The position numbers were made by a program, and so were the translations under genes. A DNA stretch of 64,000 bases, from positions 62,001 through 126,000 of the IMG/VR virus record IMGVR_UViG_3300032268_000832. The stretch is one strand, 5' to 3'. How positions within the stretch are numbered: position 1 is the stretch's first letter; every line of letters begins with the position of its first letter. This document shows positions 4,040 to 54,457 of the stretch, one piece after another. Under the pieces are notes generated by a model. That model had not been told where the DNA came from. It did no database searches and saw nothing but the letters and a program-made list of their open reading frames with translations.

Positions 4040-4768
4040 CTACAAGCCTCGTTTTGTTAAGATTTCATACAAATCTTTAAATCTTTTCATCGCAATACGT
4101 ATGTCTTTGGTTGAAAGATTTGTGTAATTTCTCATAGTTTCTAAAACAGAGTTTTTATTATATTTTGAACCACCGTCAAAACCTTCAAAAGCAGATTCCC
4201 AATTTTCCAATATGTAAATTAAGGCTAAACCTACTTTCTTTTCGTTTTCGTTTAGTTTCTTTTTTGGTGGTAGTTTTTCGTCGTTCATTTCTTCTTTGAT
4301 ACCTTCAATAAGGTTTAAGATGAAATCATCCATAACAAAACTATCATTATCAATTACATAAGTTAAATCTTGGCGTTCCTCAAAATCAGTCATCATATCT
4401 TCGTAAGATGATGTTTGTCTTAAGTGTTTTTCGTCTTTGATTAATAAACCTAATATATAATTTTTACTAATGGTCCCGAAGTATGAATAAGCTTTTTTAC
4501 CTCGTCCAGCTTCAAATTTATGTACTTTCGTCATCAAGAAAGAAACGGTGTCACTATGAAGTTCTTCATAAGTTTCACCCTTTCTATATAATTTATATCT
4601 CCTGATGATTGCTTCTATCATTTTATCCAAAGGGGCTTTTAACCATTCATTGAATATTAAATTTCTTTCGTTGGAATCTTCTGATTCTAAAAATCTGATA
4701 ACTGCTTCTTCTTCTTCGGGACCAAAATACATTTCATTTGTTCTTTTGCGTCCTCGTTTAGTAGCCAT
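4040..4768 (-). CDS. Phage late sigma factor (T4 gp55-like, region 2 only)
   Basis: EELHSDTVSFLMTKVHKF...KAYSYFGTISKNY resembles sigma region 2.2-2.4 (gp55 NPFAYFTQ-type motif). Confidence 0.65.
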   Translation of the reverse strand: MATKRGRKRTNEMYFGPEEEEAVIRFLESEDSNERNLIFNEWLKAPLDKMIEAIIRRYKLYRKGETYEELHSDTVSFLMTKVHKFEAGRGKKAYSYFGTISKNYILGLLIKDEKHLRQTSSYEDMMTDFEERQDLTYVIDNDSFVMDDFILNLIEGIKEEMNDEKLPPKKKLNENEKKVGLALIYILENWESAFEGFDGGSKYNKNSVLETMRNYTNLSTKDIRIAMKRFKDLYEILTKRGL

Positions 4769-47204: not shown

Positions 47205-50200
47205 ATGGGACAAAAAATTAATTCAACACCAATAAGTTCAATATATTACCAAACTGGTAATGGTACACCATCACATATAGCTACTATAGGTTGTGTATAT
47301 ACTGACGTTGATACTGGGAATATGTATATAAATAAAGATGGTTTAGTTAATTGGGTACCTTTTTCAGATTCAAGTTCATCAATATTTGGAAATTATTTAC
47401 CATTGTCTGGTGGTACTGTATATGGTAATACTATCTTTACTAGCGGTCTTACTGTTAATTATTTAGATTTTGATACTACACCAATAGTTCCATCACCAAC
47501 TGGTGGTACACTATATTTTGATTCAACTGAAAACGCTTTATCCTATAAACCTGTTACAAATCAAAATGATGTTACGGTAAATTTGGGTCAAGAAAGTTTA
47601 ATTAAAATTTACAATAATTTAGGATACCAAATCAACAATGGTCAAGTTTTACATATTACAGGGTCTACTATAACAGGTGGTACACCAACAGTTGCGTTGG
47701 CTAACGCATCAAAATTAGGAACCGTATTTACTGTAGGTTTAGCACAAACTTCAGGTGTTGCAACTCACGATATACCTAGCGGACAATATGGTTTTATGAC
47801 AAACTTTGGCGTAGTTAGAGATTTAAACACATCAGCGTTTACCGCAGGGCAAGAGGTATTTTTATCTGATACTATTGATGGGGCTTTAACCAACGACCCA
47901 AATGATATTGCATACACTTCAAGGGTTTCAACCGTTGGTTATTGTTTGGAATCAAATGCAACAACAGGTAAAATATTAGTTCAAATTACTAATGAAAACG
48001 CTGTACAAAGTTTGACACAACTACAAGTAAATGTGTTGTTGGGTAATACAATATCGACAGGTGTTTTTAATTTTACTGGAATAACGTTGGCGTCAAGCAA
48101 CACGTTTAACGTTGCACCAGTAGATGCTTGGTTGGTTGACAATACAACAAATCCTTTAGTTCCAGAAGTTCTTTATGTTAAGTATTCTGGTCAAACAAAT
48201 ATTCCATCACTTTATTATAATACGGCAACAGAAACATACCTGTTACTTACTAGTGCTGGTACTATAACACAACAGACAACATTTCCAACACCGCAACAAA
48301 GAAGACAAAATATTTATTTGGGTAAAATGGGTCATGGTAATAGAACTAGTCTTATTAACGCATTTAACGAACCCGATTTAGACGTATCACCATTATCACA
48401 ACTTCGTGATATGTTTACACCGATTAAATTAATAAATGAAAATATTTATCCAAGCCCTAATTCAAATCTAACATTTAATACTAGTAGTGGAACTTTATTT
48501 GGGTTAGGTATTGGGTTTACGACAAATCAACTTAACCCAAGTAGTATAAGTGTATCAGGAAACTCACCAACAACATTTCAATATAGAACACAAACAGGTG
48601 GTACAGCAACCAATAGAACTACAATAGACCCAGCAAATTATGATTTAAATGGTGTAGTCACTTCAATTGGAAGTCCAGCAAAACAAGCGACAAACCAAAG
48701 AATATATTTGTTACAAAATGGTCAATTTAGGATACAATATGGTCAAACTAAATATGCTGATTTAACAACAGCAATTGCAGCGGTTAATACAGAAGCATTT
48801 ACAACATTTTCAAACTTTAGGGATAACGCAGTATTAATTGCAATATTATCTGTTAGGTCAGATGCAACAATTTTAAGTAATATAGCACAAGCCAAAATTA
48901 CGTTTGCATCAAAATTTGGTGAAACAGTAGGTGGAACTGGTGGTATTTCAACCACTACACTTCAACAAGCGTATGATAATTCAGCAACACCTGAGATTGT
49001 AACAAATTCGGCAGAAGGTGCATTATCTATTAAAAATGGTACTGGTAATGCTGATAACGTAACTAGATTACTTGAGGGTCTTAATGCTGCTGGAAATGCA
49101 ACTAGTTTTATTAGAGCTGATGGTGATATATCTGGAACAACAATACAAACAAATAATTTAACAGCTACTACAATTTCAGCTACAACAGTAACAGCAAATA
49201 ATCTTAATGGTTTATCGTCTTCAGCAACAACCGCGGTAAATGTTAATATCACAGAAATTACAAATGCACCTATTGATTATAATATAACTTTTGTAGGTAG
49301 TGTCTCGGGTAGTAATGGTTTAGGTGTTGATTCAACCACTTTAACTTATAATCCAAGTATTAGTACTTTTAAAACCCCAGTTATGTCTGCATCATCAACA
49401 ATAAATTCTGGTACTCTTACAACAACTACAATAAATGGTTCTAATAACCAATCAGGTATCGTTGTTGTTGGTAGTAACACAGTTGGTGGGTCTGGTTATG
49501 TAGATTTCATAAAAGTCACAAATACGTCTGCTGGTGCAACAAATATAAATAAAACAATTCGTGTAAACAACACAGGTGCTATAGAATTCATCAACAGCAC
49601 ATATCTTGCAACAACATTTAGTATTTCAGATAATGGTATCATAACAATTACTAGCCCAGCAAGCGTTACAAGTAATTCTGCGACTAACAATGCGTTGAAT
49701 GTTGGAACTAAAGGTCAATTATTTGATGATGGTAACTTTCATATACACAGTAATAGTGGTTCTGTATGGATTAATTCATTGGATGGTAATCCTATTCGTT
49801 TAGGTACACAAACCAATACAGGTAACTCGGCTGTTATTGTAGATACAACTACTGTTGGACATAGTTTCTTCACAAAAGTTCAGAGTGGTTTTAACGTGGC
49901 TTTTGGTACCGAGATAACCATGGATAACTTAAAGATTCGTATTAACGGAACTGGTGGTTCTGGTGGTCTTGTACAAGCTGGTGCTGTGAGTGGTAGTTTT
50001 GCTGCTTATACAACTTTAGTTGGTAATGTTGCTGGTGCAGCACTACAAGGTGATACTAATTCTGGTGGTATTACATTTACAACAACTTATCAAAACATAA
50101 GTGGTGTTCAGAAGACTTTATCCGCTGGTGGTGACACTACAACGTTACACCTTATTGATACCACAAACAGTAGAATATATAGAATAACAGCGATACACTG

Positions 50201-50246
50201 TCAAGGCACAACTGGTGGTTACACTAGTATTGAACGTATGTCATAA
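47205..50246 (+). CDS. Large Thr/Ser/Gly-rich fibre/appendage protein
   Basis: 1013 aa; YLPLSGGT, GVATHDI..G..GF...GVV.DLNTS decoration-like domain. Confidence 0.65.
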   Translation: MGQKINSTPISSIYYQTGNGTPSHIATIGCVYTDVDTGNMYINKDGLVNWVPFSDSSSSIFGNYLPLSGGTVYGNTIFTSGLTVNYLDFDTTPIVPSPTGGTLYFDSTENALSYKPVTNQNDVTVNLGQESLIKIYNNLGYQINNGQVLHITGSTITGGTPTVALANASKLGTVFTVGLAQTSGVATHDIPSGQYGFMTNFGVVRDLNTSAFTAGQEVFLSDTIDGALTNDPNDIAYTSRVSTVGYCLESNATTGKILVQITNENAVQSLTQLQVNVLLGNTISTGVFNFTGITLASSNTFNVAPVDAWLVDNTTNPLVPEVLYVKYSGQTNIPSLYYNTATETYLLLTSAGTITQQTTFPTPQQRRQNIYLGKMGHGNRTSLINAFNEPDLDVSPLSQLRDMFTPIKLINENIYPSPNSNLTFNTSSGTLFGLGIGFTTNQLNPSSISVSGNSPTTFQYRTQTGGTATNRTTIDPANYDLNGVVTSIGSPAKQATNQRIYLLQNGQFRIQYGQTKYADLTTAIAAVNTEAFTTFSNFRDNAVLIAILSVRSDATILSNIAQAKITFASKFGETVGGTGGISTTTLQQAYDNSATPEIVTNSAEGALSIKNGTGNADNVTRLLEGLNAAGNATSFIRADGDISGTTIQTNNLTATTISATTVTANNLNGLSSSATTAVNVNITEITNAPIDYNITFVGSVSGSNGLGVDSTTLTYNPSISTFKTPVMSASSTINSGTLTTTTINGSNNQSGIVVVGSNTVGGSGYVDFIKVTNTSAGATNINKTIRVNNTGAIEFINSTYLATTFSISDNGIITITSPASVTSNSATNNALNVGTKGQLFDDGNFHIHSNSGSVWINSLDGNPIRLGTQTNTGNSAVIVDTTTVGHSFFTKVQSGFNVAFGTEITMDNLKIRINGTGGSGGLVQAGAVSGSFAAYTTLVGNVAGAALQGDTNSGGITFTTTYQNISGVQKTLSAGGDTTTLHLIDTTNSRIYRITAIHCQGTTGGYTSIERMS

Positions 50247-50248
50247 AT

Positions 50249-50398
50249 TTATTCACCGTATAAGTCTTTTTTAGGTGTGCAACCCTCTCTAATCAGTTTT
50301 TCCACAAACTGAAACATCTTTAACCCATTTTCTTCACAATATTTTTTAAGAAGTTCATGGGTTAAAGGTGTTATTTTTATGTTTTTATCCCTTTTCAT
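50249..50398 (-). CDS. Ribbon-helix-helix DNA-binding protein (49 aa, not in ORF track)
   Basis: MKRDKNIKITPLTHELLKKYCEENGLKMFQFVEKLIREGCTPKKDLYGE: strand-helix-G-helix pattern. Confidence 0.7.
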   Translation of the reverse strand: MKRDKNIKITPLTHELLKKYCEENGLKMFQFVEKLIREGCTPKKDLYGE

Positions 50399-50414
50399 AT
50401 GTCTTTTACCTATA

Positions 50415-50445
50415 AGTATGATAAAAATATGAAAAAAATCATACT
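50415..50445. promoter_or_regulatory. Putative RHH operator
   Basis: AGTATGAT-N15-ATCATACT inverted repeat plus a central TATGA box. Confidence 0.5.
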
Positions 50446-50492
50446 AAAAGTGATTATTATTTTTTTACAAACCCACTTTTGAAAAATCAGTG

Positions 50493-50500
50493 ATATTTAT
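50493..50500 (+). promoter_or_regulatory. Putative late promoter ATATTTAT
   Basis: 50 nt upstream of sheath ATG. Confidence 0.6.
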
Positions 50501-50550
50501 TATAAAACAAAACATTAAATTTAATAATATCACTTAAAAAGTAAAAAAAT

Positions 50551-53406
50551 ATGGCAACAAAAGTGTTCGTAAGTCCAGGGGTTTATACCTCAGAAAAAGA
50601 CTTATCATTTATTACACGTCAAATCGGTGTTACAACTTTAGGTTTAGTTGGGGAGACTACAATAGGTCCTGCATTTCAACCAATTTTTGTAGGCAATTAT
50701 GGCGAATTCCAATCTTTTTTTGGTGGCCAAAATGCTACTAGAGTAAAAGATAACGGTGCACCAAGATATGAATTACCTTATATCGCTAAATCGTATTTAT
50801 CTCAATCAAACCAATTATTCGTAACTAGAGTATTAGGGTTTTCTGGATATGATGCAGGTAAAGCATGGGGTATAACATTACAAGGTACATTAGACCCTGA
50901 TACTGTTGGGGTAACTTCATCAGGAACCACATATAGTCCTATAATTTCATATACAGCAATAACTGCTACTAATGAGGTTGTTAGTGTTGTTTCAAACGTA
51001 CCTTTAATTCAACAATTATATAATGATGGTACTTTAGTAAATCCATTGAATATATTGGGTACTTTCAGTGCTACAGGTAATGTCGCATCTATAGATGTAG
51101 AGTACAAAAAAACAGGTGCTACTTATAGTGGTGTATCATTTAATTTATTTGTTAATTCAATCGGTACTACTGGTTTATATACAACTGGTACAACAACAGG
51201 TGCTACAGTTACTTATTCTGGTTCAGCATATTCTGATGTTGAAAACAAGTTGGTAACTTTATTACGTTCTAGAGGTACAATAAATTCAGCTACACAGTTA
51301 CCTAACTTTGAAGTTAGTGCGGCTACAGGTAATTTAGGTTTTAACCCTACTTATACCGCTGCAAATAGTGACGCTTTAGGTGATTTCGCGTTGACTGGTA
51401 CATCTAATACTCAAGGTGCTTTTAGTTATGTATTATCGTTTGATAAAACAAAACAAAACTACATTACTAGAGTATTGGGTAGAGAAGCTCAAGATGGAAC
51501 AACAGCAATTTTTGTTGAAGAGTTCTATAACAATATGTTTACTGATTTAAACGCTGCTGAAAAAATAGCTGGTATTAATTTAAGTCTTGTGAATTATAGT
51601 GGAGAATTTTCTGATTATCAAAAAGAATACCAACCAGCAGTTACACCTTATGTAGTTTCTGAATTACGTGGTACTAACTTATTTAGATTATTTAGATTCT
51701 GGACAATATCAGACGGTAACGCTGCTAACGAACAATTTAAAATATCTATTAGAAATATTAATTTAGATTCTGGTGAATTTGATGTTGTTGTTAGAGGATT
51801 CTACGATACTGATGCTCAACCAACTGTATTGGAAACATTCAGTCGTTGTACTATGAGCCCAACATCTAATAATTACGTTGCTAGAAGAATAGGTACACTT
51901 GATGGTGAATACCCATCTAAATCATCTTATGTTCTTATTGAGATGGATACTGATTCAGATACTAGCGATATGGTTCCAGCTGGTTTCGTAGGTTTCCCAA
52001 TTAGAGATTACCAAGAAAATAGCAATACAACAGTTGTTAACCCTGCTATTGAGTATAAAAAAGCTTATGGTACATTTGAAAATAAACGTAAATATTATTT
52101 AGGTTTATCTGAAACTGTAGGTATTGATTCGGATTTCTTTGATTATAAAGGGGTTCCTGTAGGACAAACTTATGATATGTGGACTGGTCTTACAAAAGGT
52201 TTCCATATGGACGTTAATGCTACTGGCGCTACAATCGACAATGTATTTGTTGTGATTAACAATAGTGGTGATACATATAATCCAATATTCTTATTTGATA
52301 CTGGTGACGCTGCGTTTAACAGTACTGCTGTAGCAGATGCTAATAATCCATATAATAAAATATATGCGCGTAAATTTACATTTGCACCTTATGGTGGTTT
52401 TGATGGATGGGATATATACAGAACTAGAAGAAGTAACTTAGACTCATTCTTAATCAACGGTACTAATGGTGTTAAAGGTTTAAATAGTGGTGCTTTTACT
52501 AATAGAACACTTACAAACGGTGATTTAGGTATTAATTCAGATTACTACGCATATTTAGAAGCTATTTGGACATTTAAAAACCCAGAAGCAGTTAATATTA
52601 ATGTGTTTGCAACTCCAGGTATTGATACGTTTGATAACAGTAACTTAATTGAGGCTGCTATTGAAATGGTTGAAACTGATAGAGCTGACTCATTATATAT
52701 TTTAACAACCCCAGATACAAATGCTGGTGGTGAGGTTATGTCAGCTGAAGAAATTTCAGATTTCTATTCTGATGGTTCTTTCGATAGTAACTACTCATGT
52801 ACTTATTGGCCATGGATTCAAGTAAACGATACTGAAAATAATGTTTACATTTGGATGCCGCCAACAAGAGATGTAGTTAGAAACATCGCGTTAACTGACA
52901 ACATTGCATTCCCATGGTTTGCTGTTGCTGGTATTCAAAGAGGTGATGTTGACTGTATTCAAGCTCGTAAAAAACTTACTCTTTCTGAAAGAGATGCGTT
53001 ATACGAAAATAGAGTTAACCCAATTGCAACTTTCACATCAGATGGTGTTAAAATCTGGGGTAATAAAACTCTTCAAGTTAAAGAATCTGCTCTTGACAGA
53101 ATCAACGTTAGAAGACTATTGTTACAAGCTAGAAAACTTATCTCTGCTGTTTCTATCAGATTGTTATTTGAACAAAACGATAGTGTTGTAAGAAATCAAT
53201 TCTTATCATTGGTTAACCCAATCTTAGATAATATTAGAGCTGAAAGAGGTCTTACAGACTTTAGAGTGGTTCTTTCAAATGACCCAGAAGATATCGATAG
53301 AAATCAACTTACAGGTCAGATATTCTTGAAACCAACTAGAGCGTTAGAGTTCATCCAATTAGAGTTCGTAATTATGAACACTGGTGCATCTTTCGATAAC
53401 ATCTAA
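50551..53406 (+). CDS. Contractile tail sheath protein (gp18-like)
   Basis: SPGVYTSEKD, G.T..GPAF.P, YWPW, PWFAVAG..RG, NPI, WGNKTL, RINVRRL, PTRALEFI. Confidence 0.95.
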   Translation: MATKVFVSPGVYTSEKDLSFITRQIGVTTLGLVGETTIGPAFQPIFVGNYGEFQSFFGGQNATRVKDNGAPRYELPYIAKSYLSQSNQLFVTRVLGFSGYDAGKAWGITLQGTLDPDTVGVTSSGTTYSPIISYTAITATNEVVSVVSNVPLIQQLYNDGTLVNPLNILGTFSATGNVASIDVEYKKTGATYSGVSFNLFVNSIGTTGLYTTGTTTGATVTYSGSAYSDVENKLVTLLRSRGTINSATQLPNFEVSAATGNLGFNPTYTAANSDALGDFALTGTSNTQGAFSYVLSFDKTKQNYITRVLGREAQDGTTAIFVEEFYNNMFTDLNAAEKIAGINLSLVNYSGEFSDYQKEYQPAVTPYVVSELRGTNLFRLFRFWTISDGNAANEQFKISIRNINLDSGEFDVVVRGFYDTDAQPTVLETFSRCTMSPTSNNYVARRIGTLDGEYPSKSSYVLIEMDTDSDTSDMVPAGFVGFPIRDYQENSNTTVVNPAIEYKKAYGTFENKRKYYLGLSETVGIDSDFFDYKGVPVGQTYDMWTGLTKGFHMDVNATGATIDNVFVVINNSGDTYNPIFLFDTGDAAFNSTAVADANNPYNKIYARKFTFAPYGGFDGWDIYRTRRSNLDSFLINGTNGVKGLNSGAFTNRTLTNGDLGINSDYYAYLEAIWTFKNPEAVNINVFATPGIDTFDNSNLIEAAIEMVETDRADSLYILTTPDTNAGGEVMSAEEISDFYSDGSFDSNYSCTYWPWIQVNDTENNVYIWMPPTRDVVRNIALTDNIAFPWFAVAGIQRGDVDCIQARKKLTLSERDALYENRVNPIATFTSDGVKIWGNKTLQVKESALDRINVRRLLLQARKLISAVSIRLLFEQNDSVVRNQFLSLVNPILDNIRAERGLTDFRVVLSNDPEDIDRNQLTGQIFLKPTRALEFIQLEFVIMNTGASFDNI

Positions 53407-53968: not shown

Positions 53969-54457
53969 ATGGCTGATTTATTAATGAAAATGCCCCTACC
54001 ATACGAGCCTAAGAAAAAGAATCGTTGGTTAATTACATTTCCAGCTGACTTAGGTATCCAACAATGGTGGTTATCTTCAGCATCTAGACCTTCAATAACA
54101 CAAAATGAGGTTGAGATTCCTTTCCTAAACACATCTACATGGGTTATTGGTAGATTTACTTGGGAAGCAATTGACGTTACATTCCGTGACCCAATTGGTC
54201 CTTCTGCTACTCAAGCAATTATGGAATGGGTTCGTCTTCACTCTGAATCAATCACAGGTCGTCAAGGTTACGCTGCTGGTTATAAAAGACCAGTTGAGTT
54301 AGAAATGCTTGACCCGACAGGTGTTGTTATCGAGAAATGGTTATTAGATGGAACTATGCTTACAAATGTAGGATTTGGTGATTTATCATTTGAGGATGAT
54401 GGTATCGCTGAGATTACAGCAACTCTTAGGTTTGATAGAGCAATCTTATTATTCTAA
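53969..54457 (+). CDS. Tail tube protein (gp19-like)
   Basis: EPKKKNRW, RPSI, GRFTWEAIDVTFRDPI, MEW, LDPTGVVIEKWLL.G, FGDL. Confidence 0.9.
   Translation: MADLLMKMPLPYEPKKKNRWLITFPADLGIQQWWLSSASRPSITQNEVEIPFLNTSTWVIGRFTWEAIDVTFRDPIGPSATQAIMEWVRLHSESITGRQGYAAGYKRPVELEMLDPTGVVIEKWLLDGTMLTNVGFGDLSFEDDGIAEITATLRFDRAILLF

What the first reader, a model, noticed from the sequence alone, without database searches (positions are those of the whole stretch)
50249..50500. Hidden RHH regulator and operator divergent from the tail sheath gene
Seen: a 49 aa antisense ORF below the ORF-track cutoff with an RHH pattern. Upstream are TATGA boxes at 50417 and 50428 (11 bp apart) and an inverted one at 50439, forming AGTATGAT-N15-ATCATACT. 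This overlaps a one-mismatch late box on the minus strand (ATACTTATA, 50411-50419) and lies about 50 bp from the sheath late box. Inference: an autoregulated repressor/activator tuning late tail gene expression, unusual for T4-like late control.
Basis: partly seen in the sequence, partly recalled or inferred. Interest (0 to 1): 0.6.

Follow-up and report, generated by a model that had tools for sequence, protein, structure and literature searches.

The report
Conserved small repressor beside sheath gene
A 49-residue DNA-binding protein gene on the opposite strand between the tail-fibre and tail-sheath genes of an uncultured freshwater jumbo phage is real and very strongly conserved, and most likely shuts itself off by binding three short repeats over its own promoter; nothing shows that the sheath gene depends on it.

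Summary
The 49-aa antisense ORF (50249-50398, minus) is a real gene. It has 231 protein clusters at 76-94% identity, 218 viral loci, and pN/pS 0.16. It stays at 76% identity or more where the neighbouring sheath drops to 47%. It matches the ribbon-helix-helix (RHH) family PF10723 at the curated cut-off.

Upstream lie three heptads: AGTATGA, then TCATACT twice, at offsets of 13 and 11 bp. The last starts 23 nt before the ATG. Their columns are 94% conserved against 72% for the rest of the intergenic region, and the cluster is unique in the 306-kb genome. They overlap the gene's own promoter-like elements.

Four sheath relatives that lack the gene also lack the heptads. Three of them keep the sheath late box. 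So the heptads belong to the RHH gene, not to the sheath promoter.

In some relatives a GIY-YIG homing endonuclease sits exactly between the heptads and the RHH gene. Its C-terminal domain is a copy of this RHH domain.

Best reading: an autoregulated RHH repressor, a new member of a known kind. Control of sheath expression is not supported. DNA binding is inferred, not shown.

The parts
50249..50398 (-). 49-aa RHH-type gene (MKRDKN...DLYGE)
   Evidence: PF10723 at 21.5 bits (cut-off 21), matched by 54 of 58 relatives. 231 clusters at 76-94% identity. pN/pS 0.16.
50415..50421 (-). Heptad C (TCATACT on the minus strand), starting 23 nt before the ATG
   Evidence: same position (22-24 nt before the ATG) in nearly all of 55 distinct relatives.
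50411..50419 (-). Late-type promoter box with one mismatch (ATAcTTATA), overlapping heptad C
   Evidence: 27 genes have ATATTTATA at this distance. This gene is the only one with C at position 4, and that C is part of the heptad.
50426..50432 (-). Heptad B (TCATATT here, TCATACT in relatives), 11 bp upstream of C. In relatives, B plus its spacer reads TACTTTTG, a host-type -7 box.
50439..50445 (-). Heptad A (AGTATGA on the minus strand), inverted, 13 bp upstream of B
   Evidence: the inverted-direct-direct order with offsets 13 and 11 is found in 38 of 55 distinct intergenic sequences.
50475..50486 (+). Conserved ACTTTTGAAAAA block just upstream of the sheath late box. It belongs to the sheath side; function unknown.
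   Evidence: 89% column identity. Absent from other late promoters of the genome. Kept in RHH-less relatives L135 and L155.
50493..50507 (+). Sheath late-type promoter box (ATATTTATTATAAAA, one mismatch to the genome consensus; exact in most relatives)
   Evidence: 97% column identity.
50551..53406 (+). Tail sheath gene (951 aa), divergent from the RHH gene
   Evidence: Phage_sheath_1 and phrog_23. Divergent neighbour of the RHH gene in 84 of 84 loci found through the RHH.
47205..50246 (+). Tail-fibre-like gene (1013 aa), convergent with the RHH gene, with only 2 nt between the two stop codons
   Evidence: phrog_16641, tail fibre.

Best explanation
The ORF encodes a small ribbon-helix-helix DNA-binding protein of an uncultured freshwater jumbo phage whose host is probably in Bacteroidota. 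Its dimers most likely read the heptad TCATACT through the invariant N-terminal strand (K5, N6, K8, I9, T10). Three heptads lie 17 to 47 nt before its ATG: one inverted, then two direct, 11 bp (one helical turn) apart. They cover the gene's own promoter-like elements: a late-type box ATAcTTATA in heptad C and a host-type -7 box TACTTTTG at heptad B. Bound protein would therefore block its own transcription, which is negative autoregulation that holds the protein at a set level. Shown here: the gene is real and under strong purifying selection; the family assignment; the conserved box array and its overlap with promoter-like motifs; its uniqueness in the genome; and its loss together with the gene. 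Inferred: dimer formation, binding to the boxes, and repression. Autoregulation would explain how the protein's level is set, not what the protein is for. The invariant C-terminal tail (KKDLYGE) points to a further, unknown partner.
For: Real gene: 231 clusters at 76-94% identity; 218 viral loci; pN 0.11 against pS 0.72, with all 49 third codon positions variable; more conserved than the sheath, which falls to 47% identity. RHH kind: PF10723 above its cut-off, matched by 54 of 58 members; weak matches to PHROG Arc-like repressors; profile match to the solved viral RHH protein chain 2kel at E 0.045; all named language-model neighbours are RHH families; two helices at 11-24 and 29-39 after an extended N-terminus. 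Boxes: 21 box columns are 94% identical, against 77% in their spacers and 72% elsewhere, and 39 of 10,000 random window triples do as well. Offsets of 13 and 11 and the distance to the ATG are fixed, while spacers flip between T-runs and A-runs. One relative has further copies of the heptad at about 11-bp steps (L023). The box cluster is unique in the 306-kb genome. Overlap with the promoter. Linkage to the gene: of 67 loci found through the sheath, 63 have the gene and 61 of those have the tandem pair; none of the 4 loci without the gene has it. Independent hint that this RHH domain reads this DNA: a GIY-YIG endonuclease whose C-terminal domain is a copy of the RHH sits directly after heptad C in several lineages. 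That copy keeps K5, K8, I9, T10, T13 and H14.
Against: There is no binding or expression data. The monomer model shows no strand and has mean pLDDT of only 70. Structure searches gave nothing significant. The boxes coincide with promoter-like motifs, so their conservation and their loss together with the gene could be explained by promoter function alone. The middle box is degenerate in this window. The endonuclease may sit at this spot because it arose there by local duplication, not because it targets the boxes. Metatranscriptome contigs cover the sheath gene but not this gene; contigs cannot prove absence.
Confidence: 0.6

Rival explanations
1. The boxes are only promoter elements of the small gene, read by host or phage RNA polymerase holoenzyme. 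Heptad B with its spacer would be a Bacteroidota -7 box TAnnTTTG, and heptad C a late box. The RHH protein would bind elsewhere or act mainly through its conserved tail.
For: TACTTTTG fits the -7 consensus found before about 70 genes of this genome. ATAcTTATA lies at the normal late-box distance. The boxes are lost together with the gene, as a promoter would be. No other box cluster exists in the genome.
Against: Promoter function does not explain the inverted heptad A. It does not explain the repetition of one heptad at one-turn spacing or the extra copies in L023. It does not explain the conserved C that makes the late box sub-optimal. No -33 TTG lies at the right distance from TACTTTTG (read). 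Operators overlapping promoters are the norm for RHH repressors (general knowledge).
Confidence: 0.2
2. One reading: the RHH protein bound at the boxes also tunes the divergent sheath late promoter, as repressor or activator.
For: The gene is the divergent neighbour of the sheath gene in 84 of 84 and 63 of 67 loci. The intergenic length is nearly fixed at about 150 bp. A further conserved block lies between the boxes and the sheath late box.
Against: The boxes end 48 bp before the sheath late box. Three RHH-less relatives keep the sheath late box, and two of them also keep the CAAAAGT block, without any heptads. The other 26 late-type promoters of the genome have no such boxes. Shared position can be simple vertical inheritance.
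Confidence: 0.12
3. An orphan RHH antitoxin-like protein that neutralises a host toxin or defence system. This has been proposed for free-standing antitoxin genes of aquatic jumbo phages (PMC12619734).
For: The RHH fold is common in type II antitoxins. Language-model neighbours include antitoxin families. The conserved C-terminal tail suggests a protein partner.
Against: There is no toxin gene next to it; the neighbours are the sheath and fibre genes. Only about 10 residues follow the second helix, which is short for a toxin-binding arm (general knowledge). The best family match is a regulator family.
Confidence: 0.06

Closest known systems
Arc and Mnt repressors of Salmonella phage P22 (RHH)
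   Same: A very small phage RHH protein. The operator is made of short sub-sites about one helical turn apart and overlaps the promoter it controls. Weak matches to PHROG Arc-like families, and Arc was the top, non-significant, Foldseek row.
   Different: No significant sequence or structure match. It sits inside a late structural gene block, not in an immunity region. It has three non-palindromic heptads rather than one 21-bp symmetric operator (the operator layout of Arc is recalled from the literature, not tested here).
Plasmid RHH regulators: CopG/RepB-regulator family (PF10723) and omega repressor
   Same: PF10723 is the only curated family matched. As recalled from the literature, omega binds 7-bp non-palindromic heptads in direct or inverted order, which is the closest formal parallel to the box array here.
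   Different: The score is just at the cut-off. The heptads here are 11-13 bp apart, not contiguous. The context is a phage late region, not plasmid copy control or partition.
SvtR of Sulfolobus rod-shaped virus 1 (PDB 2kel)
   Same: Best solved-structure sequence match after spurious SUMO hits (E 0.045). As recalled from the literature, it is a viral RHH that represses its own gene and a structural (tail-fibre) gene.
   Different: The match is weak and covers only the two helices. It is an archaeal virus. Control of a structural gene is not supported here.
I-TevI of phage T4 (GIY-YIG homing endonuclease that also represses its own late promoter; cited in PMC12619734, ref. 71)
   Same: For the endonuclease found in relatives: a GIY-YIG catalytic domain joined to a separate DNA-binding module, placed just downstream of a site that overlaps a promoter.
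   Different: The DNA-binding module here is a copy of the neighbouring RHH regulator, not a zinc finger plus helix-turn-helix. Cleavage and repression are untested.

Membership tests
Ribbon-helix-helix superfamily (Pfam PF10723 RepB-RCR_reg) | Profile match at or above the curated cut-off | tested here: met
   21.5 bits against a cut-off of 21. 54 of 58 relatives match at E <= 0.01. The margin is thin.
Ribbon-helix-helix superfamily (Pfam PF10723 RepB-RCR_reg) | Strand, helix, turn, helix order, with alternating polar and hydrophobic residues in the N-terminal strand | tested here: inconclusive
   Helices at 11-24 and 29-39 with a Gly-containing turn. Residues 5-10 (KNIKIT) alternate as expected, but the monomer model leaves them unstructured. 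Fold searches were not significant.
Ribbon-helix-helix superfamily (Pfam PF10723 RepB-RCR_reg) | Obligate homodimer with a two-stranded ribbon | not testable with these tools
   Needs a solved structure, a confident dimer model or solution data.
Ribbon-helix-helix superfamily (Pfam PF10723 RepB-RCR_reg) | Binds short repeated sub-sites on one DNA face | not testable with these tools
   Only comparative support: three conserved heptads at offsets of 13 and 11 bp.
Autoregulated phage repressor (Arc-like logic) | Operator overlaps the gene's own promoter | tested here: met
   Heptad C overlaps the late-type box at the standard distance from the ATG. Heptad B overlaps a TAnnTTTG-type box in relatives. 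The promoters themselves are predicted, not mapped.
Type II antitoxin (RHH type) | Adjacent co-transcribed toxin gene and a long C-terminal toxin-binding arm | tested here: not met
   The neighbours are the sheath and fibre genes on the other strand. Only about 10 residues follow helix 2.
T4-type late promoter | Short A/T box at a fixed short distance before late structural genes, with no -35 element | tested here: inconclusive
   ATATTTATA lies 12-32 nt before 27 ATGs, including the fibre gene and several other large genes. The polymerase gene has a host-type promoter. Timing and the factor that reads the box are unknown. Three sigma-70-like ORFs are present.
GIY-YIG homing endonuclease (gene found in relatives only) | GIY-YIG catalytic domain, patchy presence at one fixed site, and decayed copies | tested here: met
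   PF01541 above its cut-off in L013 and L017. The order is always sheath, boxes, endonuclease, RHH. Remnants occur in L016/19, L044 and L054/55. Copies are scattered on the sheath tree beside endonuclease-free sister loci. Cleavage is not testable here.

The most novel reading that the evidence does not exclude
The protein is more than a self-repressor: it would be a DNA-anchored adaptor. Its invariant C-terminal tail (KKDLYGE at the very end) is shared with a second, otherwise dissimilar phage protein, and is kept in that protein's distant orthologues. On this reading the tail recruits a common partner to the divergent late-promoter region, for example a hub of late transcription or replication. 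Because the operator cannot change, it would also have become the homing site of a GIY-YIG endonuclease that copied the same RHH domain as its targeting module.
Probability: 0.12. Interest if true: 0.7.

Novelty: new member of a known kind. Interest (0 to 1): 0.4.

Why it matters
Small RHH repressors that control themselves are common in phages and plasmids, so the core finding is ordinary. It is still useful for four reasons. It adds a real gene, below usual ORF cut-offs, that is better conserved than the tail sheath across a large uncultured clade of freshwater jumbo phages, with no relative among 50,697 GenBank phage records. It defines that clade's two promoter classes. It gives a compact protein and 31-bp operator pair that could be tested directly. 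It also exposes a homing endonuclease that appears to have borrowed its neighbour's DNA-binding domain, a tidy example of how such elements may acquire new targets.

Tried and rejected
- **Homodimer prediction:** no verdict (0.37 against a mark of 0.42). This is evidence neither for nor against dimer formation.
- **Foldseek against PDB:** only non-significant rows (Arc at E 3.7, TacA2).
- **VIA-align wide search:** best Z 4.0, generic helical hairpins, uninformative.
- **PDB profile search:** the top rows are spurious 15-residue SUMO matches.
- **GenBank phage collection:** no DNA match and no protein match to the small gene.
- **Rfam on 50150-50650:** nothing.
- **Sigma-70 promoter scan:** no more hits than in shuffles, and it is the wrong model for this host.
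- **Genome-wide scans for heptad pairs, exact or with one mismatch each:** only the self site above chance, so no further targets could be named.
- **Metatranscriptomes:** only assembled contigs were available. They cover the sheath gene in four runs from three studies but not the small gene, apart from one 151-nt record across the end of the fibre gene and the 3' end of the small gene. No strand, start or level can be read.
- **Sliding-clamp-binding tail, as in T4 gp33, gp55 and gp43 (PMC2988020):** the phage's polymerase ends differently, so there is no support.
- **Is the 139-aa protein that shares the tail a full paralogue?** Profile comparison aligns only the last 14 residues.
- **Is the genome a 'moraphage' (PMC12619734)?** Size, habitat and probable host fit, but no HSP70 gene was found. 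Not shown.
- **Length limits of the word search:** it sees only proteins of 27-86 aa, so it could not find the 150-aa endonuclease fusions. These were found by reading the loci.

Full report
**Setting.** The window is bases 62001-126000 of a 306,463-bp IMG/VR virus record, judged 86% complete, with 30.9% G+C. The region holds T4-like tail genes:
- a tail-fibre-like gene (47205-50246);
- a 951-aa sheath gene (50551-53406);
- a tube gene (53969-54457).

The nearest sheaths in GenBank phages are only about 33% identical, and no GenBank phage has the small gene. Near-identical DNA occurs in lake and river metagenomes from 18 studies.

**Observation.**
- the 49-aa ORF on the minus strand (50249-50398);
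- TATGA at 50417 and 50428;
- TCATA at 50439;
- the exact 8+8 inverted repeat with a 15-base spacer (50415-50445);
- ATACTTATA on the minus strand at 50411-50419.

In this AT-rich stretch the inverted repeat is one of 17 inverted pairs in 181 bases. So the single sequence proves little, and the test had to come from relatives.

**The ORF is a real gene.**
- The word search found 231 protein clusters at 76-94% identity, many on contigs of 100-370 kb.
- The viral collection holds 218 loci that encode it.
- Among 58 distinct coding sequences, pN is 0.11 and pS 0.72. All 49 third codon positions vary, against 17 second positions.
- In all 84 loci fetched through the small protein, it is the divergent neighbour of the sheath gene.
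- It stays at 76% identity or more where the sheath falls to 47%.
- Twenty residues are invariant, including R3, K5, N6, K8, I9, T10, H14, C21, C40 and Y47.

**Family.**
- Pfam PF10723, an RHH-type plasmid regulator family, matches at 21.5 bits against a cut-off of 21. It matches 54 of 58 relatives.
- PHROG Arc-like repressor families match weakly.
- A profile search of solved structures gives the viral RHH protein chain 2kel at E 0.045.
- All named language-model neighbours are RHH families: Arc, CopG, RHH_1, RHH_3, RHH_9 and TacA.
- The AlphaFold monomer has mean pLDDT 70. It shows an extended N-terminus and helices at 11-24 and 29-39, which is the expected order.
- A monomer cannot show the ribbon, and fold searches were not significant.

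I take the RHH assignment as likely, not proven.

**Promoter classes of this phage.** Two motifs stand out upstream of genes.
- About 70 genes, mostly small ones but also the DNA polymerase, carry TTTG, 19 bases, then TAnnTTTG. From general knowledge this is the Bacteroidota housekeeping promoter, and no Shine-Dalgarno sequences are visible. Both point to a Bacteroidota host and to early or middle genes.
- Twenty-seven genes carry ATATTTATA, followed by an A-rich run, 12-32 nt before the ATG. They include the fibre gene and several other large genes; only the fibre gene of these could be annotated as structural. The sheath has the same box (exact in most relatives, one mismatch here) but about 45 nt further from its ATG.
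- I call this second motif the late-type box.
- The phage has three sigma-70-like ORFs.

**The boxes.** I aligned 55 distinct intergenic sequences in the orientation of the small gene. The conserved blocks, in order, are:
1. a block in the sheath leader;
2. the sheath late box;
3. TTCAAAAGT;
4. an A/T-rich stretch;
5. AGTATGA (heptad A);
6. a 6-base spacer;
7. TCATACT (B);
8. a 4-base spacer;
9. TCATACT (C);
10. about 16 bases and the ATG.

The main measurements:
- The order inverted-direct-direct with offsets of 13 and 11 occurs in 38 of 55 sequences. Heptad C starts 22-24 nt before the ATG in nearly all.
- The 21 heptad columns are 94% identical, against 77% for the spacers and 72% for the rest. 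Only 39 of 10,000 random triples of 7-column windows do as well.
- The first spacer flips between T-runs and A-runs while the heptads stay fixed.
- L023 has further copies of the heptad at about 11-bp steps. A deep branch (L051, L053, L058, L059) has a rearranged set that includes a perfect palindrome built from the same half-sites.
- In the 306-kb genome this is the only cluster of the heptads, whether exact or with one mismatch each.

**Overlap with the gene's own promoter.** Heptad C runs into ATAcTTATA, 18 nt before the ATG. This is the standard late-box position. It is the only gene of the genome with C instead of T at that place, and that C is part of the heptad. In most relatives, heptad B plus its spacer reads TACTTTTG, which fits the host-type -7 box. 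No -33 TTG lies at the right distance. Whichever element is the true promoter, a protein on the heptads would cover it.

**Whose boxes are they?** I repeated the search starting from the sheath protein.
- Of 67 loci with enough upstream DNA, 63 have the small gene. Of those, 61 have the tandem B-C pair, and the other two have a one-base deletion in C.
- The four loci without the gene (L135, L155, L156, L161) have no heptads.
- Three of these four still have the sheath late box, and two of them also keep the CAAAAGT block.

So the heptads travel with the small gene, and the CAAAAGT block travels with the sheath promoter. The sheath promoter exists without the RHH system. It does not exclude a modulating effect.

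**An unexpected witness.** In L013/14, L017, L065 and L170-172, a 150-aa gene lies between heptad C and the small gene.
- Its N-terminal two thirds are a GIY-YIG nuclease domain (PF01541 above its cut-off in two of three tested).
- Its last 45 residues are a copy of the RHH protein, 52-59% identical. The copy keeps K5, K8, I9, T10, T13, H14, Y20 and C21 but lacks the C-terminal tail.
- The insertion starts directly after heptad C and replaces the late-type box and leader. The heptads themselves stay intact.
- L016/19, L044 and L054/55 hold decayed remnants.
- The family has only 27 clusters of about 150 aa, some of them truncated.
- A distant relative of the catalytic domain carries a NUMOD3 motif instead of the RHH copy and sits at another locus.
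- On a sheath tree, intact copies and remnants are scattered, each next to endonuclease-free sister loci.

This is the pattern of a free-standing homing endonuclease. Enzymes of this kind bind through a separate DNA-binding module and insert next to the bound site (general knowledge of I-TevI and Seg enzymes). The location therefore suggests that this RHH domain reads the heptads. The alternative is that the fusion simply arose on the spot by duplication, and this cannot be excluded.

**Mechanism proposed.** RHH dimers bind the three heptads on one face of the DNA, from 17 to 47 nt before the ATG. This occludes the gene's own promoter, giving negative autoregulation. The steps from 'binds' onward are inference. 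Confidence is about 0.6.

**What remains open.** A protein this conserved should do more than regulate itself, yet no second target site is detectable. The last seven residues (KKDLYGE) are nearly invariant.
- The same ending, KKTDLYGE, closes a 139-aa protein elsewhere in the genome (bases 173082-173501, L173).
- Distant orthologues of that protein, 31-52% identical, still end in DLYGE, DLYDE or similar.
- Profile comparison aligns only the tails of the two families.

A shared short C-terminal motif suggests a common partner. Its identity is unknown, and the phage polymerase has a different tail.

**Expression.** Four metatranscriptome runs from three studies hold contigs of close relatives. 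These cover the sheath gene from its start codon onward but not the intergenic region or the small gene. One 151-nt record spans the end of the fibre gene and the 3' end of the small gene. Contigs give no strand, start or level, so this neither supports nor refutes expression.

**Comparison with the known.** In logic the system resembles P22 Arc, plasmid CopG and omega, and the archaeal virus protein SvtR. Membership in the RHH superfamily is supported by sequence only. The antitoxin reading fails its defining feature: there is no toxin neighbour and no long C-terminal arm. A recent paper on aquatic jumbo phages with Bacteroidota hosts notes pairings of RHH-type antitoxin genes with homing endonucleases (PMC12619734). 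Whether this genome belongs to that lineage was not shown.

Noticed in passing
L013:3542-3991, L017:3540-3989, L065:3019-3480, L170:4001-4447 (relatives; absent from the window): A 150-aa GIY-YIG endonuclease whose C-terminal domain is a copy of the RHH protein. It is inserted exactly between heptad C and the RHH gene. Decayed remnants occur in L016/19, L044 and L054/55, and copies are scattered on the sheath tree. It looks like a homing endonuclease that borrowed its neighbour's DNA-binding domain.
   Followed up: yes
G000 bases 173082-173501 (L173:1583-2002); compare window 50249-50272: A 139-aa protein ends in KKTDLYGE, the same C-terminal motif as the RHH protein (KKDLYGE). Distant orthologues (31-52% identity) also end in DLYGE or DLYDE, and their N-termini look RHH-like by eye. 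Profile comparison aligns only the tails. This suggests a shared partner-binding motif.
   Followed up: partly
Whole genome G000; in the window e.g. upstream of 34078 (DNA polymerase): About 70 genes are preceded by TTTG, 19 bases, then TAnnTTTG, the Bacteroidota housekeeping promoter form. There are no Shine-Dalgarno sequences. Both point to a Bacteroidota host.
   Followed up: partly
Whole genome G000; in the window upstream of 28456, 41244, 47205, 54558, 58037, 62036: A late-type box, ATATTTATA followed by an A-rich run, lies 12-32 nt before the ATG of 27 genes. The phage carries three sigma-70-like ORFs, one of them in the window at 4040-4768 (minus).
   Followed up: partly
window 50475-50486 (+): The conserved block ACTTTTGAAAAA lies just upstream of the sheath late box. 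It is absent from the other late promoters and is kept in two relatives that lack the RHH gene. It contains a TTGAAA that could serve as a -35-like element. Its function is unknown.
   Followed up: partly
window 50489-50497 and 50526-50534; also 50448-50454: A perfect 9-nt inverted repeat (AGTGATATT / AATATCACT) brackets the sheath late box and leader, with a further AAGTGAT upstream. It is present only in the window's own subclade of relatives.
   Followed up: no
window 50508-50550: The sheath late box lies about 45 nt further from its ATG than in other late genes. In most relatives the leader holds a conserved block that reads ATAAAGTAAATAA on the sheath strand.
   Followed up: no
L135, L155, L161, L156 (relatives): Four sheath relatives lack the RHH gene. 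In three, the upstream gene ends 81-119 nt from the sheath ATG. In L156, an ORF of the DUF7487 family occupies the place of the RHH gene.
   Followed up: partly
window 50249-50398 (-), residues 21 and 40: Two cysteines are invariant across 58 relatives. The endonuclease fusions all keep C21; most of them lack C40. A disulfide or a metal site is possible.
   Followed up: no
L023 and L051/L053/L058/L059 (relatives): These relatives have variant operator layouts. L023 has further copies of the heptad at about 11-bp steps. A deep branch has a rearranged set that includes the perfect palindrome AAGTAT-C-ATACTT directly before the gene.
   Followed up: partly
window 50185-50203 (-): A terminator-like hairpin with a T-rich tail lies 46 nt downstream of the RHH stop codon, inside the end of the fibre gene. 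It was the only such site in the 600 bases scanned (0.2 expected).
   Followed up: no
window 50550-53400: Contigs from four lake and river metatranscriptome runs (three studies) cover the sheath gene of close relatives. One contig starts exactly one base before the ATG. The intergenic region and the RHH gene are not covered.
   Followed up: partly
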